NCBI GenBank assembly: GCA_965285935.1
Contig: OZ260661.1
Location: 60,574,001-60,638,000 of the forward strand
DNA from: Ophelia neglecta
Lineage: Eukaryota
DNA: 64,000 nt
Reading direction: 5' to 3'
In this document: positions 2,340-58,582 of the stretch, piece after piece
Layout of the letters: every line of letters begins with the position of its first letter
Position numbering within the stretch: position 1 is the first letter of the stretch
Translations under genes and position numbers: made by a program
Notes under the pieces: model-generated
Told to the model about the DNA's origin: nothing
Databases searched by the model: none
The model's input: the letters and a program-made list of their open reading frames with translations, nothing else

Positions 2340-4002
2340 GAGGCGTCCCGCAATTTACTGCGTTCACTGGGTGCTGAAAAATAAAAAAGCAAGAAATCAC
2401 TCAATGGGCTACTATGCGAGGCGATCCATTACTGTAGCCTGGAAATAAATCATTCTGGATGAGATAACAAGGCGACGGGGGAGCGATTTGCAAGGGACAT
2501 TAGCCTACATTTGGTCGTATAGGCATGAAAGAGTCAATGGGAACTTGTTTAGTGTGGAGCAAGTGCCGGTTTGGAACGGTTTCAAATCACTGCCAGGCCA
2601 TAACGATGCCAATACGGATATTGAAGTGGGGTGGACGATAATATAGCAACAAGAACAATAGTGGATTAACTCCTCTGATCTAGGGGATTTAGCTGGTTGG
2701 AGATAAATCCTTAGCTAGCGGACGTAATCCAGGTGAGATGACCAAACATGTAGCGGTAATTAATTTCTGAATGACATTTAAGCAGGGTCATGGAGGTTGA
2801 TCAGTTGAATTCAGTAGCTAACGTGTTATGAAGGTCACTATTATACGAATTGAGTTTTTCCTTTCCATTCGTATCATAAACATTATATTGTAAAGCATTC
2901 GACCAGAGCAAGTAATATAAAGTTGTAAATAACCTGACCATATAAACCACCATATAACCATGTCTTTATAATAACTGGTGTGGAATCAGACACTCTGTTG
3001 ACTAGTTTCGGCCACCATTGATTATTTTATCAGCAGATATCTAAATAGTTGGGTGACATTCCTCGACTATACTTTTTCATAACATAAAATATCAGGCCGT
3101 CCGTAAAGGTCATCAAATATCAGGCACAACAAATGCTTTACAAGAACCCCATAAGAAATATCGTCTGCTCGTTCAACAAACCGGGGTTAGTATAAGTTTA
3201 GTATACAAACATAGCGGGTAAGTGATACACTGATGTGTGTTTGTTCAATCTGTTAGACATTCACTGCGAAGTCTGCCCCCATACCCTAACCAAATAGCCG
3301 AGTGGAGCCCGTATGTTTGAAGGTGGGGACCTGCAAACCTAACCACGGCCATTTAATGTCAGATAATGTTTGATCCCATCTATAAAACCCTACTCATCCC
3401 CAGTTTAACGCTGTATAATGGGCAATTGAATGAATAGATAGACTGTAGGACCCAAATATTGACGTAAAAATACTGCTTGATTCGGAAGTGCAAAGAATCG
3501 CATGTATGCATCACTCGAGCTCACTCGGATAAATCAGATCTGACAAGTCGATTCTAACATACACAGTCCTGTTGGTGCCATCTCCTCAGCAATGGCATTG
3601 ACATGGCGAATCTTATAATTATTACAGGTCTGAATGAATCTTCCCATTATACTTTAGTTTCATTGTTATAATTTCATCATTCTCAGTTATAATACCAGTT
3701 GTTTCATTGAAATTCATGTCATTTTACTATCCACAGTGCATTCAGTTGAATTTTGTAACACTTGCACTTTGGAATATACAAAAAGTGTGACACCATTCAA
3801 CCTAGTCCCTTTGTACAGGGTTTGAACGTAAAATTTATTCTAACTTTCTCACACATTTTAACAAACGCTGTTATGGAAGCAGACTGTCCAGGCCTTAGGC
3901 TAGGCAAGGCAATGCCACCCCTTTGTCTACTTTAAAGAGAGTCACAGGGGTAAGGTCTTATTAGCCAGGATCTTTTTATAATTTATTCTATTCATTGTTT
4001 AA

Positions 4003-4118
4003 AATTTGGGCAGGTAGGCGTTTCACTGTGAATATTTTCAAAACAATGTAATATGTACAATTGGGCACCTAGGCGTTACACTGGGAACAATTTTAAAACA
4101 ATGTGATATTTACAATTT
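4003..4118. repeat. Degenerate 55-bp tandem duplication (2 copies)
   Basis: TTGGGCAGGTAGGCGTTTCACTGTGAATATTTTCAAAACAATGTAATATGTACAA (from 4006) versus TTGGGCACCTAGGCGTTACACTGGGAACAATTTTAAAACAATGTGATATTTACAA (from 4061). Confidence 0.85.
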
Positions 4119-7100
4119 GAGAGTCAGATCTTCAAAATAATGGTTATAGGCCTATTACTATCTATTTTTCACAAATAACTGAGGGGCCGCTTAGGAGAAA
4201 CACACTAGGAGAAATACTTCTTGCAATATTTAAAGCCGTGCTAAATGGATAGAAAATACAAAAAGATGTGCTACCGCCGAGATGTACATGCTCGAGAGCC
4301 AACATTAATTTTATTATTTTTGATCAATCAGTGTTCCAAATTTACAGTTCGAGACCTCTATGTATGTCTACGATTCAGCTGTTTGGCCAGACTTCAAGTG
4401 ATATAAATGACGATAAAATATATGATTGAAATTATCAAGGGCCACGAAAAAAACTCTAAATGTCGATCCAAATATGCAAACTATACATAATCAAAAAACA
4501 ACAACTTCTTAATATGTTTAGAACCAAGCAAAGTTCAGCTGTACAAAACACTCCTAGGCAGTTCAATACTCTACCGAGTGTCAATGCTGCCATTTTGGCA
4601 TTAATAACTGACAGAAGTGTATATCGCCATAAAAATATGGAACAAAAGTGTTTAAGCTGTTGACATGGGTATTAGACAGATTTGAAACAATCTTTCAATG
4701 CGAACTATGGCTGAATCTGTGTAAATAACACTAAGATAACATACTCTAGTGTACAGTGCATGACAAGACACTGTATATTACTTTCATAAATACTCTCTGC
4801 CGTTCAGGCCCTGGTTGGGGATTCCTACCTTATGATATGCCCAAGTCATCCACCTTTTTCTAAGATATCTTGTCTATAAAGCGCGTAAATTTTGTAGTTT
4901 TTTAATTCTGAAATTTAGCTTAGCATTCTCGTTCCCTTCAAATGGTGTGGCCAATGCATGCGCAAGACATAAACTAGACTAATGTCTAATTGTATGATGG
5001 GAATTAATCGAAATAAGATAGCAGTTTTCACTTTTATATAATCTAAGCCAACTTAAATGGCCGAAAAATTTACTGAAAATGTTATTACATTACACACGGA
5101 GCAGACTTGTTACCTGTCATAGACTGAATATCAAAATACCTGGCGTCTGTTTATATAGGCTATATGTATGCGTGCAGATTATGCTTACCCGTGTGACTAG
5201 AATCCAAATATTTAAGCCAAATATGTTTTTACTAAATCAGGGATGGCGCCCGCCCTCGTCCTACATTCTATATTATTAACAATTTTACATAACCAATGTC
5301 GTCTGGAATTCATTTAGCGAGCATTAGAGTCCATGCAATATAAAACTATAAATCGACAGTTGACACGAACATGATAAATAATGGTAAACTGTCTTACCGT
5401 CCCAGCTATAGTAAATGTGTCAAGCGATCATGGATTTCCTTTCTGTGACAACTACACATCTCATACAAAGTCCAGAGATGGGGTCGTTTAACCGTTCTAC
5501 ATACCCAATATCTCAATAAAATCAACACCGTCCAGCTAAATGACCACAAACGTATGCCACTTCATAATTCATTCGACAGAGGCCTATATTCAAGCATGTA
5601 CATACAATTGCCAGCCCTAGGGTGCAGTGGGAAATACGCGCCAGTAAAACGTGGTAATTTCTAAAACACACTAGCAGTTTGTAAAATCTATTATTCAAGC
5701 CGATGATTGGCACATCATATGGATCATTTGAATTAATAATATCCCAGCGCACATGTAGTCATTTTAACAACAAAAAAGCTTCACTAAATCGATAGAGAAT
5801 GTTAAAACTTGCACTACAGCAATAAAATGCCATCTCTTCACTGAACGGAAGCTTATTATTTTTAGTGTACACATTATGCATTTCTGAGAGTTGTATTGTG
5901 AACATATAATTATATACAGGCGAGTGACATATCTGACTGGCAGTTTTGACAACTTAAAAGCCGTGTTATTTGTACTAAAGACACTCTAATATCTAGCATG
6001 TGCTGTCAAATAAAAATTAACTCAAAAATCTGAATAGAACGGAAACTGCGCTAGAAACACGATCAGCTGTCATTGGTTCATTGAAAAATCCTATCTTTAG
6101 ACAATGCATGCATTACGACCCAGGACAGTGCACAGTCGGAGCTCCAGCTTTGATATCAATTCCAATTGCAGATCGATATATAGCCAAATGGACTGATTAA
6201 TTTTCGATGGGAATAGTAGGCCTAAGACTGGGTTATACATATAACAACTAATGCGTGTGTCATGTTCAAACTAAAGCTGGTCAGTTAACATGGAATCCCC
6301 ATTATGCCGAAAGGTCAATTTGTGACAATGCGTTTTCTATCGTAAAGTATTATTAGCGCAATTGTTTTCCTGGGTCATAACTCTAATACATTATTTATAA
6401 CTATATCAATGGATTTGTAAAATGACTAGGATAAAATCCATCGAATATAAATCTGGAGTTCTAAGTGTGAATATTTCTTAAGTGGGACACCCTTCGGATG
6501 TTATTAAGCATTCCATTTGCAATGAGTTATCATCCTGATAAAGCTTTAGTCGGGATTTAGCACGGCCAAGGCAGGCCTAAGTACATGTAGCAAGAAACTA
6601 AAATTCTGTACAATTAAGAGATGGCTTCTCTTGGTGCTCATTCCCCGGAGGTCCAATTATAACAAGTATGGAAGAGGAAAATGGGATTGAATTTGGCATT
6701 GAGTTGCTTGTATGAGAAGTTTCATTTCATTTAGTCCAAGTCATAAGCCAGATTAGTTAGTCACAAAGACGGGGATTCGAAATCCCGGCTTTTGCATGCA
6801 AGTAGGTTTAACGCTGTCAGAATTTGACTAAGACACTTGTCATTTTTGTGAAGAGCTTATACCGATCGACGAATTGATATTTTAATTATTTTGTACAAGA
6901 TACCACAACGGATGTAAATCAGACATCTGCAAACTAGGCCAAGCTCGAGACCTCAGTGCTGAGAAACATTATGACATGAATATAGGTCCAATTCACCGTG
7001 AAAACTAATTTATTTATTCCTAAACGAAAACGATTTGTTTTATTTACAAATTTAAAATAGATACTTTACAAGTTGAAAGGGGCATAATATAAAAAAATTC

Positions 7101-10100
7101 TCTTATTATCCTCTTGATGACTATTTACTTTCTTATATTATATCAATATGTCAATTTTCTTAACACATAGGCCTATATGTTCCTACATAAAAGACAGATG
7201 TAGCTCTTCACGCGTCAATCAGTCTTTCTAGCGTCAAGCTAATATGTCAGTATATATGGTCGCTGGCTAAACAAACGAAATAATTCTCGAACCATGGTTT
7301 GTGATTGTAAACTGGTGTCAAGATGACTCTCCAAAGGAAGTAGATATAAAAGTATTTATTAGGGACTGGCCATGCCTTGAAATATTGGAGCAATAAAACT
7401 GCCTCTCGCCTTTGTGCGTCAAAATGATGAGTAGAATTTGATTGCCCGCACGGCCATTTTGTATTCGGGTCGCAGCGGGACTGAGAGATATCTAGAGGAA
7501 ATAAAACCACCATTCTTCTATCAATTTAACGAACTTCCTCCCAATCAGGATGGTTGAATGTCAGATTTCAAATGTAACTGTTCAGATGTCATCGTTTATA
7601 AGCCTACTTCATACTGGTGAAGCAAATTTTCCGTTTCTATTCGTCCATATGACGGTATAATATACCGGTTCAAAATGGCGGCAACCTTTGACTGTCGGTT
7701 AAAATGCCATTATTCAGTCATAATTCTCGATAAATAACTCAATTTTATGTCACAAATAGGTACATTACTATCTTCGTATTGCAGGTCTTGAAGATGGAAT
7801 AGCTGATATTACTGATACGAGGAGGAAATGACCGGATACAAATGTAAACAACACTCCAGAAAGAAGCAAACCAGAAAAAAAGGACGAAAGTTGCTGAAAT
7901 TTGTGTAAAAATCTAAGAGCGTCCTAATTCCAAATATGTCTGGAGTGGAAAGATAAGCTTGTCGACTGTCGTTCACATTTCTGAGGAGTGTGTAATTTTA
8001 TCAGATACGGAGAATTTCGTTTATTTCAACTAGCACCTTAAACACGGGCCGCCATATTGGAAAGCGAGCATAGGCCGTAGCCTTCACACATAGTAAAATG
8101 CTTTCAGCAACGTAGTAGAACAAGATTGATTTATCGTTTGATTCTGGCTCTTTGCCCCGTAGTTACAGCCGTTTGCTGCTGAACTGTTTTCTCCGATGAA
8201 ATGCAACTATAAACATTATTGCCACAATGACTATTTAATTGTCAATTACTCGCTCAGTAAGCACAGTCGCCACGATTCTAGTTTATCACTATTGCTCCAC
8301 ATGCACGTAGCCTATAGTCGGCCATTATTTATGTCATGTGATCGCTAGTTTATGCGACAAAACATTGCTCAGAAATCTAAACAACATTTTATAACCATGT
8401 ATTATGATTTCACGCATGAGTCTGGTAATAAAATATTAAATGAACACGAGCTGTGGTCGGTTTTTCGTTAATGTGTGCATTGGAAGCTGGTGCGGGACAA
8501 TGAATGGGCAGAGAGACGTGGGAGTCGGCACAGGCCTGATTTGTGTACGATGTCTTACTAGAGGTCAGCGAGGGGCCAGGGGTAGCTGCGTTCAAACAAA
8601 TCAATCGCGAGCGCCCCTCTCAATGGGAATGTTACATGACATCGGCTTGTACTGTATAAAACCTCCATGGCACTGATGTTCTATACACTCACAAACAGCA
8701 ATAAACTCCTTTTTATACAGAATGAGTCGTTCTAGACCTAGTAGAGGAGTGAATTTGATCAATTAGCCTGGAAGCGTTGTTAAGCACGCCCGTAGCAGTC
8801 GCCATTTTATTATCCAACACGTTTCGAAAACTGCACAAAACCAACAGCAAATTGATATGAATGCGAGGCAAATTTCACTGGGGCTGTAAAATGAATGTAG
8901 TATTAATACCGCCGGGCGAACAGCCTTTCTTCTGGGAATTTAAATCAGCCAGGGATAATTTAATATATACTTATTGTCGACGAAATGACGGTAATTCCTT
9001 TAAAATAATACGGATTGGCCAGGCCTCTCTATATATATTATTTAAACAAAGTTTAGGCCAATTTATATAGTGAATATCAGATAGGGTTATAGGCCTACGG
9101 GCTTGTAGATTTAGAAATTTCATGAGTCAGTTTCATGCATATCATAAAACAATTATGCCTATCGGAGATATTTCGAGTAGCATACATTTTATTTATTTAT
9201 TTATAACATATTTTTATCAAGTAAAACTCATGTCGGGACATTAACTCCCTCCAGGGATCTAAACAGAAAGAAAACAATGCATAACTGTATAAGATCCACC
9301 TATATGCATAATATAAAGTTAACCTTAACTTTCATCTACCTATAATTACAGGCCATTTTTTGTTGTGGCCAAAGGTCAAGTATGATAACCAAATCAAATG
9401 TTAGTAACTAAGCAGATAAATTAACTTTCAACTTAGTAATAAGATTCGAGCAGAACTGAATTTAATTCCTTTGATCAAACCGAGCCCTATAAACCTACAC
9501 ACAAGTTCATATTTAAATGATTATAATATCGATAATTGTGGACGACTAAATAATTGACTGGAACAATGATCGTCCGAAGTAGCGTGATAGTTCGATCGAT
9601 AGCTTATTAGCGGGGCATGTCACGTTTGGGACGAGCTTCCCTGGACAAGGGCTGGTAAAGTTAGTTAATTACCAGATCTCTAAGTCAGCCCGGATTCGTT
9701 TGACGAGCAGACGACACTGCCAGCGGATGAAGTTGATACGAACTTGACACACTTCTTCTCTTTGTTGTAACACATGAAATATGCATGGCGATATTTGTGA
9801 CAGGTAGAACACCCCGGTGGGTGAAGTTGAAATTGACCAGGTTGGCTAATAATATCTTTATTATTGACACAGCACACAGCCTGGGGACTACAGGGGACGA
9901 GAATATGATTTTATCCGACGCTCTTTCCGACTTGTCCCGTCAGATTTAGAGACAACACAAATGCAGTAATTGACATGCTACAAAACCCACGCAACTCTGC
10001 GGACTACTGTCGGCGAGCTGAACATGTAATTTTTATGATTAAGAAAATCAGGCTAGTTTATAGCGTCGTGTAGTTTGCAGTTTCATCCCTGACGTTTCTG

Positions 10101-11299
10101 GCCGGGGTCGGCAAGGTGAGGCCGCTACAGAGAAAGCTGCAGGCAAGAAACTAACTGACAAGTCGACAGACGGCAGAACGGTGGAAAACTTGGTAAGGAA
10201 GCAGAGCTAAGAGGAAAACTACCCTCAGAAGTAGACAGCAAAAAGTGTACTTATGACAGTCTGATTTCCTCAATTATCTTGTCAAGCTGCGAATGGTAGC
10301 AATATTACAGGCTTGTTCTTGGTTACCTCGGGACACACCGGGGATATTTTAATTATGCACTGCCAAAATAGAAACAGAGTCTTGTTATCTGACAGAGGAA
10401 AGTCGTGCCAGGCACAGAATTTTTGAATATTTGATCCATATGAGTGGTAAAAAAAGCAGACGAGAATTATCATACAGCGTCGTGCGCCCTGTCGAGCCCG
10501 CAGACATCTTGTCAATATTAGTACAGCGTTTTGTTTTAGACGGAGTCTCTGCCCTGAATTAAAATGTGCTGTTTACCAGTGTTACACCTCTGCACTGAAC
10601 ATCCATGCTATCTTTATTTTCAGTGCTGACACCTGCATTTTCCAGCTATACACTTTTTCCCCGCTTTCGACCGTAGCAGAAAAATAATTCAATATAAATA
10701 AATGATAATCCAGTGAGGTGTAGGTATAAATTATCCACACAAAGCAAATCATGAAATTAAGATTTATGACAGATTTTTGTAGTTTTCCCATGCAGATAAA
10801 GGAGGACCCGGCCTAGTGTCGTTTGTTTGATTGGCTGGATACACTATACACGGCTATCTGAGAGCTGTCAACCAGCGAAATCCGAGTCGATAAAACCAGA
10901 TAGGTCAGATGTCTAAAATCGCCAGGCGAGCATGTTCTTGTTTATTCCCATCCAGTTTTGTTTACAACGGAGCTTGAATCTAATATAATTTCACAAACAA
11001 AGTCCAAGCATCTGTTAGCAGCTGTGTGCGAGATTTAGTTTTCTAACTTCTGAGAAAGTCGTAGTCGATACTGGGAACTTTAGAGGCTAAGCTAACTCAT
11101 GGCGGGATATCGAGATTGACATAAGATGCACTTTTCAAAGTTCAGTAAAACCAAATAACCAATGGCCTCCGGGGGTTGTCTGTATTTTTCCCTGCATATC
11201 CAGAGATGAGTTTCTTTTCTTTTGACTGATGTCATGCAAAAATTCTATCAAGTTGCCGCACTTTTTGTTTGGCTTTGCGGTATGAAATGATATGGAGGA

Positions 11300-11490
11300 T
11301 TGACGGGTGGGACTGGTTTCCCGGGGAGCCTGAGATTGACATGTTGGCTGTGAAGGCGAGGGCCCCGGCGGGAGGGGAGGCCAGATGCGGCGAGGTGTTC
11401 CGCACCAGGGACATGGCCCTTCGAGAGGGCAGTCCAACACCTCCGCCCGTAACCCGACTCTCGCCCAGCCCCCTCGGGCATTCTTCACCC
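11300..11490. promoter_or_regulatory. GC/CpG-rich island with Sp/KLF GC box; candidate promoter or enhancer
   Basis: Abrupt GC-rich segment in an AT-rich background with many CpGs. CCTCCGCCC at 11440-11448. The overlapping ORFs on both strands show no protein-like signature. Confidence 0.35.
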
Positions 11491-12916: not shown

Positions 12917-12927
12917 TGATGGATGGG
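12917..12927 (+). promoter_or_regulatory. Pbx/Hox (PG1/anterior-type) bipartite site TGATGGATGGG
   Basis: Exact match to the TGATGGATGG Pbx-Hox1 element class (Hoxb1 autoregulatory repeat type). Confidence 0.35.
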
Positions 12928-14401: not shown

Positions 14402-14443
14402 GCAACCTCAAAGTTTGGAGTTGCAACCTGAAAGTTTGGAGTT
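14402..14443. repeat. 21-bp tandem duplication (2 copies, 1 mismatch)
   Basis: GCAACCTCAAAGTTTGGAGTT followed directly by GCAACCTGAAAGTTTGGAGTT. Confidence 0.9.
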
Positions 14444-15710: not shown

Positions 15711-15795
15711 CTCCCAGATGGTGTGATCTATAACTGAGATATATAGTACAGGGTCAAAGGTCACTACTTGAAATTAAGTCGAGCTGTCATAAAAA
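15711..15795 (-). other. Candidate non-coding (Hox3 5' leader) exon, 85 nt
   Basis: Acceptor CTATCATTTTCCTAG| (15798-15796) and donor GAG|GTAAGT (GT 15710-15709). Splice signals only. Confidence 0.3.
15751..15763 (+). promoter_or_regulatory. Perfect DR1 nuclear-receptor element GGGTCA-A-AGGTCA
   Basis: Exact match to the RGGTCA n1 RGGTCA consensus bound by RXR/COUP-TF/HNF4-class receptors. Confidence 0.5.
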
Positions 15796-16782: not shown

Positions 16783-16824
16783 GCAGCTGACTGACAGCAA
16801 CATTGACACGGGATTGTCAGCTGC
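16783..16824. promoter_or_regulatory. Symmetric TALE/E-box module
   Basis: 9-bp perfect inverted repeat GCAGCTGAC...GTCAGCTGC, each arm containing a CAGCTG E-box. It includes the Pbx-Meis decamer TGACTGACAG (16788-16797) and further TGACA sites. Confidence 0.4.
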
Positions 16825-43898: not shown

Positions 43899-43918
43899 GC
43901 AGCGCCCCCTACAATAAC
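43899..43918 (-). promoter_or_regulatory. Weak candidate CTCF site
   Basis: Minus strand ...ATTGTAGGGGGCGCTGC. The 3' half matches consensus and the 5' CC is absent. Confidence 0.2.
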
Positions 43919-46900: not shown

Positions 46901-49839
46901 GTTCACTACATGTTTAAATTCTTGCCCGAGTTTTGTGTTAAACAAATTGTCAATAGGATATTTTTTGGTAGTTTCAGTCAGCATATTTTCTGACTGTCAA
47001 TTTAATTGTGATTGTTATACATAAATGCAATTCATTCAGTCATATATCTATACGCCCTGGTAGCAATTTTAACAAATACATATTAATTATTTGTATACAT
47101 ATAGATGCTAAAAACTGAACATATCAATTCAATTTCCATCGGGCTTCAGAGTATAAATACATGAGTGATGATACTCACACAATTAAATACCGTTTTATCC
47201 AATTAGCAAGTTATAAAGGAAATGCTCTATTTATGTTTTACAAAATATGTAGAAGTAAACACACAGCATTATTCTATACAATACTTGTTTCAAGGCAAAC
47301 TATTTCTTTGAAAAAAAACGAAGAAATGTGCAAATGACGTGAAAATTCGTTTAGACAAGGGCTTAGTATATTTTGTGTTTGGCCAGCTTGTATCTCGCAG
47401 GGCTCTTTTACAAATGGCCCGGGGCCATCTACAACAATGGGACATTTATGCTCATCAGAATATATTCCTTGCTTGCTGGAACTAATTGTTTTGTGAATTT
47501 AGGGACCCATTGCAAATAATCATCTTAGAGGCTTTATACTTTTAGTCCTTTGGTTTTTTCTGCAATATCAATCTCAGTTAACAACTGTATGCTAAATAGG
47601 TTTTCCTGGCCCTTCGTATCTCAGTTTTGGTAGATTAAGCTATTTCACAGCGATAATTCACCGAAACTCCATACTCTGTACCGGTTTAGTATTTGACAGC
47701 TGCCTTCAAAGATGACCTTTCTGTTACGGCGGAGAGCAGCACCCTAACTCTCTGGGAAAATAGAGAATTTAGCGGCCTTTATCTGACCACGTCGGCTTGC
47801 TTTAGCAGCCTAGATAACTGATGTTTTGTTCGTCTGCTCTATATGTCGGTCTGACAGCTGATAATTTTTTAAACTTCACGTGTTTTCCCTTCGATCAGAC
47901 ATGAGATAAACATCTCGATGACCTGGTTAAGGCATGTTGTGAATATTAAGCAAATAGTTTGGAAAATATCGTTTAAGTTTAAACTTTGCACTATACAGCT
48001 ACTAATTATTTTTAAATCCGGGCAGTCTGGTGCTAATCTAAATAAATCGTTCTTTAATAGCTCATAAAATGCAAATATATATTTGAATTTCTCAAACATC
48101 TCCTACACTCTTTACGATGTATATCATTTGCAGTTGGTGAATATATCTAGTTTTATAAGTGTACATTATATTCGGATGATATACAACCAGACAGGCGCCA
48201 TTATTAAGCGACACTCCGCAAATAATTTGTGAAATTAAAACTTTGGAAACAGAACTTTTTTGACATGACAGATTCCTGGATTTTGTCGAGCACATTTCCA
48301 AATTAATTTGGAATATTTTGGTTGAATGGTCACTCACATTAGTAATAAAGAACAACAAAACTTATTCTAAAGTATCTTAGATCAAGAGTTCCAGGTTCTT
48401 ATATATTTTTAAATCTTGTTGTCGGTCACACAGTGTTGGACCATCTCAATCATCGTCAATTCTAAGCGACCACCACGATACTTGGTGTAAACAATTCCAT
48501 CGAAAAGTTCATAACATATTGGGAATGTTTGAAAAACAAGGTGAATGGGTCCCACATCCGCATGTATCATAGGAACTAGTTTGAGTCGAAACAGGCCTGA
48601 TGTTGAGTCAGCAAAGCTTTGGCCAGTATAGATTACTGTATACCATTTCATAGTTTGTGAAATGCTATAGTCCAGGGGTGTGGAAAAAATCATTGAGTCA
48701 GTTGTGTATTTTACATAAAAATCGACAACTAAGATACGGTGTACTTGGATTTCATCTAAATAAACGATTGGATGACCGTTGTTTTGTAACTATATAGCTA
48801 ACTGGCTTCAGGCACTGTGAACTTATCTGGCACACCAAAATCAGACTTAGACTTAGGCCGTAGGTTCGTACGGGGTCGAGGGAAGTGACGGAATTTTGAC
48901 GAAATAAAGCCTCCCAGCGTAGTCGGGGTAACATTGACAGAAAAGCTCATATACAGGCTGACGGCTCAATTTTATAAGCTCGACTCAATAGCAATATTAA
49001 CAACTGAGCCGTGAAATCTGCAGAGTTCAAGTGGAATGGTATAATCCAATTCTTCCTTGAGCAGCATTTCAATTTAAGGTCTGAGTATTTCAGTCATTTC
49101 CGAGACCAGGGTGTTATTTCAATCTAGTCATCTCAAGGAGCGAATATATTTCTATACTCACATGGTAAGTTAAGTGAACCAATTTGACACCCATGAAAAT
49201 GGCACCCAGAGATTGCTTGAAATAAAAATAATTAGCATTGATTTGTCTATAAGCTCCTATAAAAATCTATCAGCAGAGAGTCTGAGAGTCATAAATCAGT
49301 CCAAGAGATCAAATAAATGCAAAAGCAAGGTTAGCAAATATGTTTTAGTTCATTTCAACTTTCGAATAGTATTTGAAACTGCAGTTAGAGTTCGTTAAAA
49401 TGTCTTTCAAGTCTATCGAATGCATCTATATAGTTCTTCGACTGGTCATTTTTTATTACTGAAACCCTCTAATATATCTCGTATTTCTATAACAACGTTG
49501 AATATTTTATTTTTAAGAATTTCGCTAATCTACCATCATTTAGGCCTATATATAAACACACAGCTGAACACCTCCATGCTGTCGCATTACTCACTCGAGA
49601 CAGACGAGTGACATCTATAGAGGGCAAAAGCGAAATGCAACATATTTATATCACATGCTCAGCAACCATTTTGAAAAACATAATAACACAATCAACGCCA
49701 AATAGGTTTGTATACGATCAAACTCGTGTATTTTATAACTGAAGCATGCAGATAGACAAACCGTGCGTTTTGTTTTAGCTACACATAAAAAAATTACCAA
49801 ACAATGGCGTAATGAGGTCAGCATTTATTTGAAACATAC

Positions 49840-49952
49840 CTTTTTTTGGTTGCTTTGGTTTCCCACACGCTGGTTAATTTGCTCCCTGCCCGATCCGTAC
49901 AGTCTTTACTATTATTATCTGGCAGTAACATTGTTATTTTCTTCTCTAGGAG
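49840..49952 (-). other. Candidate non-coding (Hox3 5' leader) exon, 113 nt
   Basis: Acceptor with branch-like CTAAT: CTAATTTTCTGTATTTGCAG| (CAG 49955-49953). Donor AAAG|GTATGT (GT 49839-49838). Purine-rich GAAGAA near the exon start. Confidence 0.45.
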
Positions 49953-50188
49953 CTGCAAATACAGAAAATTAGGCGTATAAGGTGCAGGAGCCATTGCGAG
50001 GAACCCGAGGCCGTTTGGGTTAACCTTGACACGTTGGTCGCATGAATATGTGGCAGCCATCTTGCTTTTGTGGAAGCAGATGTCTAGCTTCAGGAACGCT
50101 GTTAAATCCTGCAGAAATGGCGATTTTTAGCAAACTTACCTTTTCCATCATAGCCAGAAAGAAGTGGGAGACTGTATGGATCCTGAAG
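49950..50188 (+). ncRNA. Candidate exon of the pri-miR-993 host transcript (antisense to Hox)
   Basis: Acceptor TTGTTATTTTCTTCTCTAG|G (AG 49948-49949) and donor GAAG|GTGAGT (GT 50189-50190). It lies ~820 nt upstream of the miRNA hairpin on the same strand. Strong downstream acceptors are at 51719-20 and 51961-62. Confidence 0.35.
50140..50182 (-). other. Candidate non-coding exon (43 nt, or 3' end of a first exon)
   Basis: Strong donor AAAG|GTAAGT (GT 50139-50138) would give a 187-nt intron to the acceptor at 49953. Possible acceptor ATTAACTCACCTTCAG| (50185-50183). Confidence 0.35.
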
Positions 50189-51011
50189 GTGAGTTAATCA
50201 GCAGTGTTTTCGTCAGTAGTTCCTGTTTTTCGTTTGTTCTAATGCCATTGTCTGGTGGGAAAGCATCAGGTCTGAGGCTAGCGTGCCGGAGCGGAACGCA
50301 TATTCAATGCGAAATGGCTTTATGGCCATTTATCATATTATCACCGGCTGGGCACAAATTGTTTTCCTGTTGTGACATTAATGCCAAGAACCACCATTAA
50401 GACACAATAAAAAGAGGCACCGTTTACCTCTCCTTCAGAGTGATTTCGTTCTAGCAAATACAGTTTTATTGCCTCTAATAACATTACACTGCGCCTCTTT
50501 TTCTAGCCGGAAAGTCTGGTGCATAATATATGTAAATTCGAAAGAAATACAGCGAACTTCTCTATGATTCTTTATATTAGATTTAAATCGTAGATTGTAA
50601 AATATACCTTATATAAAAATCAGTTTAATAGAACTCCGACTTATAGCTTGGAATTGTGTCTAAATATATACAAGTCGGCCTGTGCTTCATATATCACTTG
50701 GGCTGACGTGCATCAACAAGAAGTGTTTGTGCTGCCACTAGCAGCCAGTCTGCATAATGTATTCACCATGTTTTGAGAGTAGCAAGGGAAGACGTCTAAA
50801 CAGCTGATTACCAACAGGGAAAATTGCTTTATTATTGTCAAATACTGTGGTGTTTATTGTATAAATTCGTTAGATTGTGTTGCAGAATTGCTCCCGGTGC
50901 TGATCTGCTGGGTCCCGAGGCCGAGAACTGACCGAAAATTAGATTGGTATGGAGAAAACCGACGGTATGGCCGAAGACTACCAACGGAATGATGGGAACG
51001 GCAGCACCATT

Positions 51012-51102
51012 GCACTTTCCATATCTACCCTGTAGACCCGGGTTTGTGTGTCATTATTGACCCCTACAGAAGCTCAGATCTACAGGTATATATTGAGAGT
51101 GC
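51012..51102 (+). ncRNA. mir-993: pre-miRNA, miR-10 family, miR-993 type
   Basis: The 5p arm (C)TACCCTGTAGACCCGGGTTTGTG (51025/6-51048) has the miR-10-family start. The 3p arm GAAGCTCAGATCTACAGGTATAT (51069-51091) matches the miR-993 pattern GAAGCUC...UCUACAGGUAU. The arms pair with one bulge and three mismatches. Lower stem GCACTTTC/GAGAGTGC, basal UG at -14 (51011-12) and apical UGUG are present. It lies between Hox3 and Hox4 on the opposite strand, as known for mir-993. Confidence 0.92.
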
Positions 51103-54100
51103 TACCAACATAGCCTGGCCTAGATCAGCCCAGATGGATCAACTCCAACTGACCTGACCATATGACCTCTCAGCATGGAATGATGGACTCAGAGAAAAAT
51201 GCCATTTATCTTCCTTTCACAAAGGCTAATAGGCAGTAGGCAGCTACTACAGAATTGGTGGTAGGGGGAGGATAGTTCACGTGTTTGCTGCTAGATGTCG
51301 GTGCGGACAGGCCAATGTTTTGGTGAATTTGATCCACCATTGACAGGGGCCTGATTGCACTGTTTGCTAGAATAGCATTTCGCTTTAGAATTCTCGGGAT
51401 ATTTCTTAGTAGGAGGTACCTTGGGAGTTCGTTCCACATGACCCTTTCACCCAATGCCCCAAAGGTCGGGATAGACCATGTCTGAGATAGAGCTCTTCTC
51501 TGTCGATGTGGGCTGGTTTTCCCGTAAGGCAATTGACAGCCGTGTTCGTGATCAGCCAACCGAACCTTCTCGCTTTAAACTTCATCCTCTGAGATTAATA
51601 CCCTGAGCCGTACCACCAATCAATACGTGTGACTCTCCCTAGACAATATGAGTTGATATTAGCTTTATCTACGCTACGAAGCGCCATCAATAGATTGGTT
51701 TTCCTTGGGTTTCTTCCCAGGTCAATCTGCTGGCACTGTGGTACAAGTCAAAGCTCAATGACCCCAGACCAAAGGGGGATTTCATATTAGCGATTTGGGG
51801 CTCAAGAGGATTTGAGCACATGTGAGAAGTGAAACAACCTGTGTGTAGGGCACTCCCTGAGTGACCCACATTTCATCCCTGGATGCCTCTGTCTCAGTTG
51901 GCTGCACAATACCGGATCATCGCTAAATTAGATCTGCTCCCCCGTCTCCATTTCTCCTACAGCTTCAAATCTCCGATGTTTAGTTCGAAATCAATACGAC
52001 CACCGAAGTGTTGATCTCTCTTTCTGTCTGCCTTGTTGCCTTTCACTTTGTGGGACAATGAAATAGTCCAGGGGTTAAATAAGCCTAAGTGTAAAACCAA
52101 ACTATTGAACATACATGTAAGTCATGTGGATTATTCTTTGTCATAAATGAAAAGAGATTTTGTCCGGTAGATCAGTGAAGTTCACCACAATTAGACTGTC
52201 ACACTTTTTTGCTACTTTCAAAAAATAAGGTTCGAGCGTTTTCGTGCATAAACGAATCTCTTTTACGACCAATAGCTGATAGCGTTACTAAGACGATTTC
52301 ACCCATTACCCGCCTACATCGTCATGACAACACTCCTTTCCATGAGCGGTGCAGTCAGCTGACGCATTACGTCATCTCAGGCGACCTTGACCTTTCCCCT
52401 ATTCCACCAGGTGTTCATAGTATACCTAATCAATCTAATTATTAAAGGAAAACGCTTTCCTATTGCATTTCAAAAGCAAATATTCGGTTTAGTCGTTGTT
52501 TTTCTTTTTATAATTGTAATAATTGAAGTTTAATTCAAGTGGAATGAATAGTATTTTAAATTATCAATCATGAGCCCGGTGCCCTTGTCAAGATGTTTGC
52601 ATGCTAAATCGATCTTGCTTCTCTCCTCAAGGATATATTGGGAACAGGTGTGTATTGATAATTTTGAAACAAATCGAAAAATCGATTTATTTTATTCTGG
52701 TGTTCACTTTGTTATTTTTTGGACGGCAGTATATCGAAAATCGATCCATCATTTTCACAGCTTTACTAGTGAAAATCCTTCAATACCTAATTATCACTCA
52801 ACCAGGAGTATACTCACTACTCACATTAACCAGGAGAAAAGCTTGATCTCAATTGATATTCAATTATTGCGATTTTTACTTGCAACTATTTAATTATCCA
52901 TAAAATACTTTTTCGATGTTATCCCTATGTCTTTAGGTTTTCAGATACAGCATTGTATCATGGCAGGTCATCGATATCTATTTAAGATAAAATCCTATGA
53001 GCAATCGCCGTTTTTTTTTTCATTGAGAGGAATTGTCATAATCATCTGTCTGTATTCATATAGAATTATTTTGCTAGAATTATTCTATACTGTTTTTCCG
53101 TGAAATACAATGCAACAAGAAAGTTTAGAAATGAGCTGCCACTTTGAGACTCGATGAATAACGATAATGATATGAAGTTTAAACCTTTTTTCTTATAAAA
53201 TAAGAGTTTAAAAACAAATATCTTACTATTTTTGTTTGTGGAAGGCTTATTGAATAAAATTATTATGAAAATAAAAGAAAATGTATCTGTCCATTTTCTC
53301 ACTATCTGAAGTGTTCGATAATCATAAAATTTACATATAGGCGTAAACAAATGGGCATCGGAGCTCTGAAGTAGACCAATAACATACATGCTGGGCAGAA
53401 TATCTTAAAAAAGAAATTTTTACAGTTGGTAATGTCAATTTTTGAGTAATGAATAATATGATGTTAACATAAATTTACTTCATCTGGAGTTTTTATACTC
53501 TATGCTAGCCCATTATGCTTAAGTTCGTTAGGGATACATTTTAAGGTTTTCTCCACAGGTTTATGCTTCAAAGACATATTATAACATATTTATCTACCAA
53601 CTAGTTTTAATACTTAGCATATGTATGTGCCAATATTCCCTTACGGGAGAACATTGTAGCCTTGCAAGGTAACACGGAGTAAAGAAATTCAATAGTTACA
53701 AAATAAATCGCGAGCCGTCTAGGTCGTTTATCAAGCTCCAATTAATTAAACCTGTACGCATAGTAACGTTTAAGTATAGTAACACACATGGTAAATTCTG
53801 TGTTATGTCAATAAATATACATGAGTTTTTAATATGTCAGTTGGAGACTTAATGGACATTGTGTTAAAGAGCACATGTGTCTGACCTTAGGCACATCAAT
53901 TATATATCTATATAGATGAAGGTGGACGTGAATAAATTACCATGAGTACCCGGAGTGGCATATCGATTCATCTGTCATATAATGACATATTTAGTCCACA
54001 TCGCAAATAGCACAGAAACTGATGATGCCACAACAAATGCGCAGTGACCTCTCCAGCCATTTGACCCTGAAGCCATTAGGGCCCCTCGGCGGGCATCATG

Positions 54101-56918
54101 TTGCTAGAGAGCCTTTTAACCCCTGAACCACACCTCTGCCCTTCAATTTCAGCCGTACAGAACCAACATTGTATTGCTAATCCCACGCAAGAAATTCCTT
54201 AATTTCATAGATATTAGATTCCATGTATAATTATTATTCCGCGACTACAACAGTATTGTGTGGACCAACTACACCCTTTTATCTGAAATTTCTAATTTGT
54301 CCTAGAACAGCAGTTTTTTCAACGGAATAAATCCAATAGCAATATATCCCCTAAAAACAAATCAGCTATTGTAGAAGTTACTATTTTCTTTTCTAATAAG
54401 CAACCTCAACCATGAGGAAAAAAACTACCTAGATAGAACCCCCCCCCCCCCCCCATTGCCTGGTGTATAGAGCTTGCTTTTTTCAGTTTGGACTCTTCGA
54501 AACTTTGAGCTGCACGCTTGTCAGATCAAGGCACCCACCCCCCTCCCTCTCCTGTGAAGGCTGCCCAGCCTGTGACAGAATCTAATGAAGAAAGTGGCAG
54601 ATTCTATTATGGTGTGGAATGAAATTCTCTCGCAGGGTTTATTACATCTAAAGCCCACAGAAGCATGAAGCGCGCTTCCTTCTTTGCGGCCCTTTCCAGC
54701 TCCCCCCTGACAATATAGGAAGAAAATCAATTCCACAACTAATTGGCGAACGAAAAATGACATTTGTGAAAGTGAAGTAATTCCAAACTGGCAAGCTTTC
54801 CTATAACTGTGTTAGTCTCGTCTGCGCTGTTTGTGTTGGCCAATACTCGGTATTTGTCAGAAATTTCATTTGAGTTCATTTCCCCGGCTCATAATCAGAT
54901 GAAGATTTTAATAAAGATAGATTGAATTGGCTGCCAGCGTATTCCATTCATTGCATTCTGACACTGAGTGTGATTTTGGAAATGGTTTTATGGCCGCAAT
55001 TCGCCAATCATTCCCGTAGTAAAACTGGGGCTGCCAGGGACGAAAGGTCCGGGACCGTCATCAAGGACATGGAAATTACCGCCCCCTGTAACCCGGGTGA
55101 GCTTGTATTATACTAGTTAGAGAGGAGCTGAGTTCGTGGCCTACTGACTAGATGACATTTGGCCAAGAGGTGGACAGAGAAAGTTTGACACAATCCAATC
55201 TGATATTTAATCAACTCGTGAGAATACATTCTCCAATTACAAAGGCCAAGTCTTATTGAAACATATTTTCTGATGACAACTGTGGTAACCACGAAGGAGA
55301 ATTTATATTGCAACCGATTCCCGGGACGGGATCATAAAATAAGTGGCGAATAAGCCATAAAAACAAATCACAGCAAAGCATGTGTGGTATTTATTACTGG
55401 CTGATATAATTATTAAGGATATTCAAGTGCACGTCTGCTCCCCAGCTTATAATTATGTACAATCATAGCAATTTTAAGGTTAAACATTAATTCGTTTAAA
55501 TTGAATGAAAGTCTAACAATATAAAGAAATAAGCAGGTGTCCGCATTAAATATGCCCAGGCCAATTCTGACCACATTATTATAAAATTCAGTGCATTTAA
55601 AATGTAAAATATATCATGCACCACAAAAGACGTGTGGACGAGTGTGCTATATTTAATTGTAGAATAATGAAGTAATGTTGATTTATTGGCAAATTAAATC
55701 CATTGTGAGCATTCCTTTCTTATTTGGGAGATTGGCCTTTACACATAAAACAGTGAAAGTCGCTGTGTATGTGTCTGTATGTGCTTTGGGGGGGGGGGGG
55801 GTGCAATGTTTGGGAGGCACCTTACGGGAAAACTAGCTATTGCCTGTGGTCCGTTCTTTCTGCTGTATGTATTTCTTTCTTCAAATTAATTAGGCGGTCG
55901 GAGGGCTCTATTGACCTACGCTGTTTTTCATAGGGGTCAAACTGATAACTACAACTGCTAAAATACAATTTTATAAGAGAGTAAAATGCACTCAATAGAG
56001 CTATTAAAACACCGCTCTTATTTAAACAACAAATTAGGAGGCCTCAAACATAAATTAGATAATACAATAATATATATTTATATAATCGTGTGTGGGTGGG
56101 TAGGTTGCAATATAATAATTGACTTTCGTGGTTTATCACAATGATACTGCTTTGTAAATTATAAATTTTTTGGAATGATAAACCACCCCCCCCCCCTCCC
56201 TAGGCAGGGGGGGGGGTGTAGTTCCCTGGCCCTGAGGGGTGTTAAAAGCCCTATTTTATTGGATTAGACGTGTCTTTCACAGTTTGATTATAGGACTTGT
56301 CCTGTATGAAACATTTAAAAATCCCTCATTTAATAGTCCGCACCCCCCCCCCCCCCCCCAAGTATTTTGGCACCTGTTCCTTTGCATCGGAATAGGCTTT
56401 TACTTATTCCATGCAACACTGGTCTTTTCACATGAAAGCGTTTAAACATTTCAAGTTTCATCTCCATGTTCACATCATGTGACACTGTGTACAATAGGTT
56501 TTAATGACTGCGCTTGTTTCAAAATTTAAACCAACTGGCCTGTGTACTTATTTCAAATTAATCACTTGTAAGAACTTCTTTCAAAGGAGTTGCTATGTTC
56601 ATGTTGGTATTAATTTTGATGAGCACCAAGTGTTTATATTGATGTTATTGAAGTGCTTGGATATTATGTCATTAATTCTTACGAATTATGTTAAACTATA
56701 ACTTTGTCACCTAATGTTTATCTCTTGAGCAGGACTGGAACTAACTTACTACTTATAAAATGATTAAAGCACGATTACATGTAAACTAAACACTTCAAGT
56801 TAAATACTCATGTTAGTGGTGTCGATTTAGACACAATTTATTTTTATTTAATTTTGCTCGGCTATAACCCCAGGCGTTGCTGATTCCAATATGGCTGCCG
56901 CGTGAACACCGGTGGCAG

Positions 56919-56958
56919 AGGTCATGTAAGGTGCTCCGAGGGTCAAAGGTCGGGTTCA
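56919..56958 (+). promoter_or_regulatory. Cluster of four nuclear-receptor half-sites including a near-perfect DR1
   Basis: AGGTCA 56919-24; GGGTCA-A-AGGTCG 56940-52, directly followed by GGTTCA 56953-58. Confidence 0.4.
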
Positions 56959-57232
56959 ACCCTGTGGTTAGTTGCGCCTCCACAGCCACCGCATACATTT
57001 GTTGTATCAGTCGGTTTTGACTGTTCATTCAGAGCCAATGGCCAGAGATTCTATGGCGGATGATATCAGTGGGCATTGTTGCAAACTTTCACAAAGAGGA
57101 GTAGATTGGACGCCAGTCAAATTTGAGACAGGACATTTTTACCCTAGTCAAAAGAACCAATTTTCCAGAGGATTGCTCCTGTGTGAGAGAAATGTCAATT
57201 CTCCTGCGACAGAGGCCATCCCCCAAAATTTG

Positions 57233-57246
57233 GTTGCCATGACAAC
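57233..57246. promoter_or_regulatory. RFX X-box GTTGCCATGACAAC
   Basis: Near-palindromic match to the GTTRCCATGGYAAC consensus. Confidence 0.4.
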
Positions 57247-58512
57247 CACAAACTTCATAAGACAGACGAAAACAGATTCAATCAATAAATTAGAATTGAA
57301 ATTTCTTCTGCTTAGCGATGTATATAAGATCAGATTCGAGAAGGAAATTTAGAGCACAACACCTCTTGGGGGCTTCAGAGGGCTTATTTTTGTACAAAGT
57401 TATGGGGTTGAGTGCCCCCAACGGGAGTTGTAAGTGTGGGTAATAAGAGCTTGGGGGAGGGGAGTTGTTGCAGACGATGGCATGTCATCCATGATTCATG
57501 ACTTCGCCTGCCCAGGGGATCGGAGGGGGCAACTCTTCGAAGGCTAGGTATTGGCCATCAACTGATAGCAGTAATGGGAAATCAAACTATTACCATCTCA
57601 TCTACATTCCTAATGTATCATGGTCTTTATATATAAGCACTACAAAAATATTTACACGTGGCTTACAATTAAGGCTTTATTGATATTTCGACAATTATAC
57701 TAAGTCGATCATAGATTGTTTTTTGGCTGGGGGCACGTGACAGTTCTCCCCTTCAACTGTCTCAGAGCGACAGATACTGTGACACAACACGAGAGATCAA
57801 TCTAGAAGATTGATGATCCTCCATAGGTTTGTTTTATCAGTTTCGCATATTGATGAATATAAAGATGCGGGTGTTTGATTCAACAATACACTTAGGCCTT
57901 CAGCTCCCGATGAGACCGAGCCAACCGGAAGTTGGTCTGACACACCCTCTTTTCACTAGTTGACGTTCCACAGAGAAATTTCATTTGGAAGAAGAACCTG
58001 CCAGCTTTTTGATAAAGATCAACAGCCTAAGAAGCGAAATAAATTGCCTGTTTATTTTAGGTAAAGAACCTTCGAGTGACTGACAGCCATAACCTCTTTG
58101 ATAGACGCGCAAAGCTGGTTTCTAAATTAGAAGAAGTCAAGTCAGCAGGCAGACATTAGTTTTTCATTGAATAAGGGACCCAGTTGGCATTTGGTTTTTC
58201 TTTTGAGGTCCCAAGCGTTGTTTCTTTGGGTTTTTCACAGTGACAAATGTAATACAAAGGTCATTATTTAAGTATTTCCACACCACCTTGCAAAGTGATA
58301 TTTTACCTTCAATTAATAAAACCGACTTGAATGTATCTTTTGAAAATATTAAAATTTAATAGGGCCTATAACTACTTTAAAGGTTGAAGGTGAATCGTCC
58401 AATTTTGTCTTTCATCGTACAGTGAGGAGGTAGCTCGTCTATGAAGCGGTAACTGACATTGAACTGTTGATAAACGATATCCATCCCCACGTCTTCGGTT
58501 TCTGTCACTCAC

Positions 58513-58582
58513 TGAACAAGTTACTGCTCTAGTTTACGTCTTAGCTGTCTCCATTGAAGAATATATACCAGATTGTTCAGAC
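58513..58582 (-). other. Candidate non-coding exon, 70 nt
   Basis: Acceptor CTGATATGTTTGTTTCAG| (58585-58583) and donor TCA|GTGAGT (58512-58507). The donor overlaps a TGAGTGACAG Pbx-Meis decamer, which could explain it instead. Confidence 0.25.

What the first reader, a model, noticed from the sequence alone, without database searches (positions are those of the whole stretch)
2374..58582. Hox3 appears to have a very long, multi-exon non-coding leader spanning ~48-56 kb
Seen: the Hox3 ATG exon opens with a strong acceptor (2374-2395) and has an in-frame stop just before the ATG, so any upstream exons are 5'UTR. Seen: minus-strand segments with good acceptor-donor pairs at 58513-58582, 50140-50182, 49840-49952, 33054-33233, 18717-18756 and 15711-15795. 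Known: vertebrate Hoxa3/b3/d3 have long transcripts with distal non-coding exons reaching the Hox4 region. Inference: a similar far-upstream Hox3 leader in a protostome would point to an old bilaterian architecture and a transcriptional-delay or linkage constraint. Caveat: splice-like motifs arise by chance in 60 kb of AT-rich DNA.
Basis: partly seen in the sequence, partly recalled or inferred. Interest (0 to 1): 0.75.

Follow-up and report, generated by a model that had tools for sequence, protein, structure and literature searches.

The report
Hox3 start region; distal leader unproven
The body-patterning gene Hox3 of this worm-like animal has a promoter-type motif pair and a conserved splice-acceptor-like element just before its start codon, but the six far-upstream "leader exons" look no better than chance and no RNA data exist to test them.

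Summary
The window is Hox3 coding exon 1 (minus strand, ATG 2238) plus 62 kb of Hox3-Hox4 intergenic DNA.

The six distal acceptor-donor pairs are not above chance. In 2401-64000, equally good pairs number 13 on the minus strand and 18 on the plus strand, against 10.4 +/- 3.1 in 100 shuffles.

No RNA evidence is available. The only three public runs are colinear genomic contigs without joints.

Two new points:
- Between the acceptor (AG 2375-2374) and the ATG lies TGATTGG-N12-CACGTG (2338-2314). The same CCAAT/E-box pair precedes Hox1 and Hox4 in this cluster. It resembles the human HOXB4 core promoter (PMC2193192). A proximal start with a short unspliced leader is therefore likely.
- The acceptor block is conserved in four other Hox3-type loci. 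A matrix built from them ranks this site 2nd of 127,938 positions.

Some upstream-initiated, spliced isoform is plausible. Its exons are unknown, and the 48-56 kb six-exon chain is unsupported. The scan had already noted such CCAAT/E-box cassettes at Hox1, Hox2 and Hox4 of this genome.

The parts
1782..2238 (-). Hox3 coding exon 1 (152 codons + 1 base, phase 1), with the FPWM hexapeptide; donor CAG|GTAAGT after 1782
   Evidence: exon 2 with the homeobox is in L001 4937-4141; named Hox3 proteins are among the best hits of exon 2
2239..2373 (-). 135 nt between the acceptor-like AG and the ATG. It is 5'UTR if the acceptor is used. It holds the in-frame TGA (2244-2242), two upstream ATGs (2299, 2293, a 12-codon uORF), and TCAGA motifs at 2280-2276 and 2269-2265
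2314..2338 (-). CCAAT-box/E-box pair TGATTGG-N12-CACGTG. The E-box ends 76 nt before the ATG. Read as a proximal NF-Y/USF-type core promoter (inferred)
   Evidence: 1 match in the window against 0 in 100 shuffles. Same pair before Hox1 (133 nt) and Hox4 (99 nt). Genome: 273 matches against 40 for the reversed control. Human HOXB4 core promoter
2350..2395 (-). 3' splice-site-like element: U-rich tract 2395-2376, CAG with AG at 2375-2374, then a conserved block down to 2350
   Evidence: single-copy DNA
Its acceptor tract is the reverse complement of a 7/7 plus-strand donor at 50188; unverified
51019..51096 (+). mir-10-family hairpin in the place of mir-993 (between Hox3 and Hox4). It fits the plus strand better, that is, antisense to Hox3
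   Evidence: Rfam RF00104: 35.9 bits on plus, 21 on minus, both below the gathering score of 47.5. Fold -40 kcal/mol, z -6.4 on plus; -33.6, z -2.6 on minus. Usual position of mir-993: passages of PMC4862073

Best explanation
The span is the Hox3-Hox4 intergenic region of a spiralian (annelid-like) Hox cluster, ending at Hox3 coding exon 1.

Most likely Hox3 has a proximal promoter. A CCAAT box and an E-box 12 nt apart (2338-2314) would bind NF-Y and USF-type factors. They would set a transcription start in the 75 nt before the ATG, possibly at the TCAGA motifs at 2280-2265. This gives a short, unspliced, uATG-free leader. That step is inferred from motif homology.

Thirty-five nt upstream of that pair lies a conserved 3' splice-site-like element (2395-2374). 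It is probably used by a minor class of transcripts that begin further upstream and splice into 2373, as in vertebrate Hox3 genes. That step is inferred from conservation.

Where such transcripts start is unknown. The six far-upstream 'exons' are motif pairs of the kind this DNA yields by chance on both strands.
For: The gene and its place:
- Hox3 exon and cluster position.

The CCAAT/E-box pair:
- It is unique in the window, with 0 matches in 100 shuffles.
- It is enriched in the genome: 273 matches against 40 for the reversed control.
- 4 matches lie within 137 kb of the Hox cluster, where the genome-wide density predicts about 0.05.
- Three of those are on the Hox strand, 76, 99 and 133 nt before the ATGs of Hox3, Hox4 and Hox1.
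- In human HOXB4, a 99-bp core promoter at -153 to -55 from the ATG needs ATTGGCT and CACGTG. 5'RACE placed the starts 65-90 bp before the ATG (passages of PMC2193192).
- NF-Y/USF co-binding at that promoter is stated in passages of PMC3675019. Fixed CCAAT/E-box positioning is stated in passages of PMC3730095.

The acceptor block:
- It has 15 of 17 pyrimidines before CAG.
- YAG is invariant in 5 of 5 Hox3-type loci, with the -3 base switching between C and T. The 40 nt before it are 45-60% T, against 27-34% overall.
- The matrix from the four other loci ranks the window site 2nd to 4th of 127,938 positions.

Other points:
- Distal pairs are at chance level.
- No listed sequence difference among three genomic runs falls in 2078-2751, against 10 in 2752-3406 (15 further differences were not shown).
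Against: - No RNA of this organism could be laid, so neither the proximal start nor the use of the acceptor is shown.
- A Dfd/Hox4-type mRNA-like metagenome contig (L065) carries the same CCAAT/E-box pair inside its 5'UTR, at least 177 nt from its 5' end. The pair can therefore lie downstream of a start site.
- The four other Hox3-type loci lack the tight pair within 400 nt of their ATG.
- In those loci no good donor (at least 6/7) was found in the 0.4-5 kb of upstream DNA available, so no upstream exon was identified there either.
- The conserved block also holds a YCAG/YCAA initiator-like motif 5-6 nt after the AG. It could mark a start site rather than a splice site.
- L022 and L011 are close relatives, so the four loci represent about three independent lineages. 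Their organisms are unnamed.
Confidence: 0.55

Rival explanations
1. One reading: one long Hox3 leader of six non-coding exons (58582-58513, 50182-50140, 49952-49840, 33233-33054, 18756-18717, 15795-15711) spliced to 2373, with a start still further upstream.
For: - All sites exist, and five have donors of 6-7/7.
- All lie in single-copy DNA.
- The acceptor at 2374 is strong and conserved.
- Vertebrate Hox3 genes have long-range transcripts with exons between Hox4 and Hox3 (passages of PMC2148072; PMC1831499).
Against: - Such pairs are no more frequent than chance, and there are fewer than on the opposite strand: 13 against 18, with shuffles at 10.4 +/- 3.1.
- The donor of the first exon scores only 4/7.
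- The joined leader would hold 12 upstream ATGs in 666 nt.
- The acceptor of 50182 mirrors a 7/7 plus-strand donor.
- There is no RNA.
- No start site is proposed.
Confidence: 0.04
2. There is no spliced leader at all. The conserved U-rich/YAG block is a DNA-level element of the promoter or the initiator region itself. Under the initiator reading the start would lie near 2368 and the CCAAT/E-box pair would sit in the 5'UTR. Hox3 would then be transcribed only from here.
For: - A YCA(G/A) initiator-like motif lies 5-6 nt after the AG in 5 of 5 loci.
- No usable donor was found upstream in the four related loci.
- L065 shows the CCAAT/E-box pair inside a 5'UTR.
- There is a variant-poor stretch up to 2751, which is more than an intron end would need.
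Against: - YAG is invariant while the -3 base toggles between C and T.
- The U-rich run upstream lacks a conserved sequence.
- Conservation sets in sharply at the AG.
- These three features are the pattern of a 3' splice site.
- An acceptor this strong within 140 nt of the ATG is expected only about 1 time in 75 (6 per 64 kb).
Confidence: 0.3
3. Several alternative distal promoters feed the acceptor. Loose CCAAT/E-box places at about 16.1, 35.5 and 51.3 kb would each drive a short first exon ending at the donors 15927, 35157 and 51154. Some of the reader's exons (15795-15711, 33233-33054, 50182-49840) would then be second exons.
For: 3 of 3 intergenic E-boxes with a CCAAT within 50 nt have a minus-strand donor of at least 6/7 within 400 nt downstream. 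The random expectation is 0.11 each. 0 of 3 have one on the plus strand.
Against: - The test was post hoc.
- It was not reproduced in 166 kb of the neighbouring Hox intergenic DNA, where 0 of 12 such places have a minus-strand donor within 400 nt.
- Co-occurrence of CCAAT with an E-box is itself at the chance rate: 4 of 16 observed, about 3.8 expected.
- The spacing differs from the tight 11-12 nt pair.
Confidence: 0.07

Closest known systems
Zebrafish hoxb3a splv2 and mammalian polycistronic Hox transcripts (long-range Hox3 isoforms)
   Same: A Hox3 coding exon preceded by an acceptor, so that upstream-initiated transcripts can add non-coding exons from the Hox4-Hox3 interval. A mir-10-family hairpin lies within the span (passages of PMC2148072; PMC1831499).
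   Different: - No transcript evidence exists here.
- The hairpin fits the opposite strand, so it would not be co-transcribed in sense.
- The candidate exons are at chance level.
Human/mouse HOXB4 core promoter (HxRE-1 ATTGGCT + HxRE-2 CACGTG; NF-Y with USF1/2)
   Same: A CCAAT box in the ATTGG orientation followed by CACGTG, lying about 75-155 nt before the ATG. In HOXB4 the starts lie 65-90 nt before the ATG (PMC2193192; PMC3675019). The same pair stands before Hox4 and Hox1 of this genome.
   Different: - It is here in front of a Hox3 gene.
- No binding or start-site data exist.
- The E-box is only 76 nt from the ATG, which leaves a very short leader.
- I saw no YY1-like AAATGGCGG, which this genome's Hox4 has, in the Hox3 copy.
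mir-993 of arthropod and lophotrochozoan Hox clusters
   Same: A mir-10-family hairpin between Hox3 and Hox4/Dfd (passages of PMC4862073; legend of Fig. S4 in PMC3290615).
   Different: It scores below Rfam's mir-10 gathering score. The resemblance of its 3' arm to miR-993 is my recall, not a call. The orientation in other species could not be checked, because the figure and supplements are not held.

Membership tests
Long-range, multi-exon Hox3 leader (vertebrate Hoxa3/b3/d3 type) | 3' splice site immediately upstream of the ATG-bearing exon | tested here: met
   Motif strength is 15/17 Y + CAG. The block is conserved in 4 other Hox3-type loci and ranks 2nd of 127,938 positions. Use of the site in RNA is not shown.
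Long-range, multi-exon Hox3 leader (vertebrate Hoxa3/b3/d3 type) | Spliced reads or cDNAs joining distal exons to the coding exon | not testable with these tools
   Only 3 runs hold the exon.
Long-range, multi-exon Hox3 leader (vertebrate Hoxa3/b3/d3 type) | Distal exons that stand out from background (splice-signal excess or conservation) | tested here: not met
   13 pairs on minus, 18 on plus, 10.4 +/- 3.1 in shuffles. Upstream DNA of the related loci gave only marginal matches to the window, the best at E = 0.037, and none at a named exon.
Long-range, multi-exon Hox3 leader (vertebrate Hoxa3/b3/d3 type) | Primary transcript carries the Hox-cluster mir-10-family hairpin in sense | tested here: not met
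   The hairpin at 51019-51096 scores 35.9 bits on plus against 21 on minus, and folds at z -6.4 against -2.6. Hox3 is on minus.
NF-Y/USF-type Hox proximal promoter (HOXB4 HxRE-1/HxRE-2) | ATTGG (CCAAT) and CACGTG in fixed order with about one helical turn between them | tested here: met
   TGATTGG-N12-CACGTG at 2338-2314. The spacing is N11 at Hox1 and Hox4.
NF-Y/USF-type Hox proximal promoter (HOXB4 HxRE-1/HxRE-2) | Position within about 55-155 nt upstream of the translation start | tested here: met
   The pair spans -100 to -76 from the ATG. HOXB4 figures come from PMC2193192.
NF-Y/USF-type Hox proximal promoter (HOXB4 HxRE-1/HxRE-2) | Transcription starts downstream of the pair; factor binding | not testable with these tools
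   No RNA, CAGE or ChIP is available for this organism. One Dfd-type mRNA-like contig (L065) has the pair inside its 5'UTR, so the position relative to the start can vary.

The most novel reading that the evidence does not exclude
A spliced, upstream-initiated Hox3 isoform is an old feature shared by annelids and vertebrates, marked by the conserved acceptor block in front of the Hox3 start codon. In this genome its primary transcript would run antisense across the mir-993 locus. The long Hox3 isoform and miR-993 would then be coupled by convergent transcription instead of being co-transcribed as in vertebrates.
Probability: 0.12. Interest if true: 0.65.

Novelty: new member of a known kind. 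Interest (0 to 1): 0.33.

Why it matters
If the acceptor is used, a spiralian would share with vertebrates the habit of feeding Hox3 from promoters further up the cluster. That bears on why Hox clusters stay together.

As it stands, the useful results are more modest:
- The six proposed exons should not be annotated.
- Hox3 carries the same CCAAT/E-box core-promoter pair as Hox1 and Hox4 here and as human HOXB4.
- A short conserved acceptor-like block gives a precise place (2373/2374) at which a single 5'RACE or long-read experiment can settle the question.

Tried and rejected
RNA evidence:
- The look-up of sequencing runs found 3 runs, none on record as RNA.
- Read laying on 1700-7600 showed colinear genomic contigs with no joints and no loose ends.
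- Other agents' notes on this genome also say that no RNA exists.

Relatives:
- Exon 2 found no protein above 65% identity, so the species is not in the protein collection.
- The metagenome scan with exon 1 found no relative.
- The scan with exon 2 gave 80 loci. By tblastn, 4 of them carry a Hox3-type exon 1.
- None of the 8 mRNA-like contigs among the 80 is Hox3, so no Hox3 5'UTR could be read from RNA.

Conserved upstream exons:
- blastn of the four loci's upstream DNA against the window gave only marginal hits.
- The best is an octamer-containing 34-mer at 37919-37952. It is part of a 146-nt block shared by L022 and L027. It looks like an enhancer, not an exon, and no donor follows it.

Repeats:
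- 42400-62399 has one weak repeat match only.
- 2400-22399 has a 255-bp high-copy element at 14425-14678.
- 22400-42399 could not be scored, so 32900-33400 and 15550-19000 were searched alone and are single-copy.

Other checks:
- Rfam at gathering level found nothing in the window.
- The association between CCAAT/E-box places and downstream donors was 3 of 3 in the window. It was not reproduced, at 0 of 12, in 166 kb of neighbouring Hox DNA, and I reject it as evidence.
- My splice scoring is a consensus count, not MaxEntScan or SpliceAI, which were not available.
- Literature searches for a spiralian Hox3 leader exon or distal promoter listed no paper with those terms. This shows only that these searches found none.
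- Supplements are closed. Fig. S4 of PMC3290615, on hairpin orientation in lophotrochozoan clusters, may bear on the mir-993 strand and was not seen.
- The joined (spliced) Hox3 protein was never built or searched. Exons 1 and 2 were searched apart.

Full report
WHERE WE ARE.

The window is G000:C1:60574001-60638000. Homeoboxes lie on the minus strand of that contig at 60.527, 60.550, 60.5727, 60.6626, 60.725, 60.751, 60.785 Mb and beyond. This is an ordered Hox cluster.

The window holds the first coding exon of the third gene and about 62 kb of the interval towards the fourth. The fourth gene's homeobox is 24.5 kb beyond the window's end.

Details of the gene:
- Exon 1 runs from ATG 2238 to 1782 and encodes the hexapeptide stretch EIFPWMRENRQN. 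It ends at CAG|GTAAGT.
- Exon 2 has a Hox3-type homeodomain and lies 2.8 kb downstream in L001.
- The best named relatives of exon 2 are Hox3 proteins of phoronids, brachiopods, nemerteans, annelids and molluscs. The nearest proteins, unnamed, reach only 65% identity, so the species itself is not in the collection.
- The two exons were always searched apart.

THE OBSERVATION.

- The in-frame TGA is at 2244-2242.
- The acceptor has its AG at 2375-2374 behind a tract with 15 pyrimidines in 17.
- The six minus-strand acceptor-donor pairs are present. One of them, 58513, has a weak donor (TCA|GTGAGT, 4 of 7 consensus positions).

THE TEST AGAINST CHANCE.

I used a transparent consensus count. A donor is GT plus at least 6 of the 7 positions of MAG|GTRAGT. 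An acceptor is YAG behind at least 11 pyrimidines in 17. The exon length allowed is 30-250 nt. Results for the intergenic 2401-64000:

| Sequence | Donors | Donors with a matching acceptor |
|---|---|---|
| Minus strand | 18 | 13 |
| Plus strand | 21 | 18 |
| 100 dinucleotide-preserving shuffles | 16.9 +/- 4.3 | 10.4 +/- 3.1 |

- At stricter acceptor thresholds, real DNA exceeds the shuffles on both strands, and the plus strand again has more.
- So the distal pairs carry no information for a minus-strand transcript.
- They do lie in single-copy DNA, so repeats do not argue against them either.
- A leader made of all six plus 2373-2239 would be 666 nt long with 12 upstream ATGs.

RNA.

The decisive data do not exist in what I could reach.
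- Three runs hold the exon and none is on record as RNA.
- Laid on 1700-7600, they are contigs that run colinearly through exon, intron and upstream DNA. There are no joints and no loose ends.
- Notes of other agents on this genome say the same.
It might have led to transcript or genome contigs of relatives.

A PROMOTER-TYPE PAIR BETWEEN THE ACCEPTOR AND THE ATG.

Earlier notes of the scan described CCAAT/E-box cassettes at Hox1, Hox2 and Hox4. With these in mind, I found TGATTGG-N12-CACGTG at 2338-2314. This is 35 nt downstream of the acceptor, and the E-box ends 76 nt before the ATG.

- The pattern occurs once in the window and in 0 of 100 shuffles.
- Genome-wide, TGATTGG-N10-13-CACGTG has 273 matches against 40 for the reversed control.
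- Four matches fall within 137 kb of the cluster, where the genome-wide density predicts about 0.05.
- Three of them are on the Hox strand, 133, 76 and 99 nt before the ATGs of Hox1, Hox3 and Hox4.
- I did not find the tight pair in the 8 kb fetched around Hox2.
- In human HOXB4, a 99-bp fragment from -153 to -55 relative to the ATG is the core promoter. It depends on ATTGGCT and CACGTG, and 5'RACE placed the starts 65-90 bp before the ATG (passages of PMC2193192).
- NF-Y and USF are named as the factors in passages of PMC3675019. Fixed CCAAT/E-box positioning is described in passages of PMC3730095.

By analogy, Hox3 here should start within about 75 nt of its ATG. TCAGA motifs at 2280-2276 and 2269-2265 are candidate start sites. 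The two upstream ATGs at 2299 and 2293 would then stay outside the mRNA.

This is inference. One counter-example must be told. A Dfd/Hox4-type mRNA-like metagenome contig (L065) has one open frame from MSSFLMNS through YPWMKKIH to the homeodomain. It carries the same pair inside its 5'UTR, at least 177 nt from the contig's 5' end. The pair therefore does not always lie upstream of every start.

THE ACCEPTOR IS CONSERVED.

Among 80 metagenome loci fetched with exon 2, four also carry a Hox3-type exon 1 with EIYPWMKETRQN: L022, L011, L027 and L060. Their organisms are unnamed. L022 and L011 are close relatives.

- In all four, a U-rich run ends in TAG or CAG 45-62 nt before the ATG. It is followed by a shared block of the form AAT(T/C)CA(G/A)CC...GC..AA.TGC.
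- MAFFT puts the window's CAG in the same column.
- A weight matrix built from the four loci alone, and scanned over both strands of the window, ranks the site at 2381 second of 127,938 positions. With a larger pseudocount it ranks fourth.
- The 8-nt acceptor half and the 24-nt exon half each rank within the best 0.3% on their own.
- The 40 nt before the YAG are 45-60% T in all five loci, against 27-34% overall.

An invariant AG, a -3 base that toggles C/T, an unconserved U-rich run upstream and conservation setting in at the AG together form the pattern of a 3' splice site.

Against that reading:
- The block also holds an initiator-like YCA(G/A) 5-6 nt after the AG.
- In the 0.4-5 kb of upstream DNA available in those loci I found no donor of at least 6/7.
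- The listed differences among the three genomic runs spare 2078-2751 altogether, while 2752-3406 has ten. This is more than an intron end needs (15 further differences were not shown).

I put the splice-site reading at roughly 55-60% and the no-splice reading at about 30%.

OTHER THINGS IN THE SPAN.

- A mir-10-family hairpin lies at 51019-51096, in the position known for mir-993 (passages of PMC4862073).
- It fits the plus strand better: 35.9 against 21 bits, and fold z -6.4 against -2.6.
- The mir-10 proper, between Hox4 and Hox5, is on the Hox strand.
- A minus-strand leader starting beyond 51 kb would thus be antisense to this hairpin. This is unlike zebrafish hoxb3a splv2, whose primary transcript carries miR-10c in sense (passages of PMC2148072).
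- The only 7/7 donors of the intergenic region face each other at 50140 (minus) and 50188 (plus). At most one of the two is likely to be real.

A LEAD THAT FAILED.

- All 3 intergenic E-boxes with a CCAAT within 50 nt (16109, 35516, 51278) are followed on the minus strand by a good donor within 400 nt. The random expectation is 0.11 each.
- The same test on 166 kb of the neighbouring Hox intervals gave 0 of 12.
- The CCAAT/E-box co-occurrence is itself at the chance rate.
- I treat it as post hoc.

COMPARISON WITH WHAT IS KNOWN, AND VERDICT.

Long-range Hox3 isoforms with non-coding exons from the Hox4-Hox3 interval are known in vertebrates (PMC2148072, PMC1831499; passages only). My two literature searches listed no paper on such a leader for a spiralian Hox3.

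- The membership features that could be tested split. The acceptor is met. Distal exons above background and the sense-strand microRNA are not met. Junction reads are untestable.
- The proximal CCAAT/E-box pair meets the sequence features of the HOXB4-type core promoter.
- Hox3 exon 1 and its strong acceptor are real, and the acceptor is conserved. The 48-56 kb six-exon leader is unsupported.
- The most likely architecture is a proximal promoter, plus a still unlocated upstream start that uses the acceptor.
- Interest is modest until one RACE or long-read experiment is done.

Noticed in passing
window 51019-51096 (+); G000:C1:60685996-60686064 (-): The mir-993-like hairpin between Hox3 and Hox4 fits the strand opposite to the Hox genes. 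The mir-10 between Hox4 and Hox5 is on the Hox strand.
   Followed up: partly
L002 1385-1362 (Hox1), window 2338-2314 (Hox3), L004 2071-2048 (Hox4); L079 1441 and L084 1149; L065 178 and L068 127: The CCAAT-N11/12-E-box pair stands before three Hox genes of this cluster. It also stands before the ATG of a Hox-type gene on two unnamed metagenome contigs, and lies inside the 5'UTR of a Dfd-type mRNA-like contig. This hints at a very old Hox core-promoter module.
   Followed up: partly
window 50140 (-) and 50188 (+); plus-strand acceptors 51898/51963 and donor 52116: The only 7/7 donors of the interval face each other 48 nt apart. On the plus strand the hairpin would sit in an intron between 50188 and 51898/51963. 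This is a possible host-gene layout for mir-993.
   Followed up: partly
window 37919-37952 (-); L022 703-847; L027 530-670; L060 about 4350-4490: A 146-nt block is conserved upstream of Hox3 in the related contigs. It holds a CTGTCA (Meis-type) motif, an ATTTGCAT octamer and an E-box. Its octamer core has a marginal match (E = 0.037 and 0.32) 35.6 kb upstream of Hox3 in the window. It looks enhancer-like, not exon-like.
   Followed up: partly
window 14425-14678: A short (about 255 bp) high-copy interspersed repeat, 76-84% identical to at least 39 scored copies on many contigs, out of 701 first-look candidates.
   Followed up: no
window 2078-2751: No listed sequence difference among the three genomic runs falls here, against 10 in the next 655 nt. 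This is a variant-poor stretch covering the promoter region and the start of the exon (15 differences were not shown).
   Followed up: no
window 2299-2261: A 12-codon upstream ORF (two in-frame ATGs at 2299 and 2293) lies between the E-box and the main ATG. It would be translated only from transcripts that start upstream of it.
   Followed up: no
L011 about 408-445: The Hox3-type exon 1 of this contig has a stop 12 codons after the conserved MAD start, which the other three loci lack. This may be an assembly error, a shifted start or a decaying copy.
   Followed up: no
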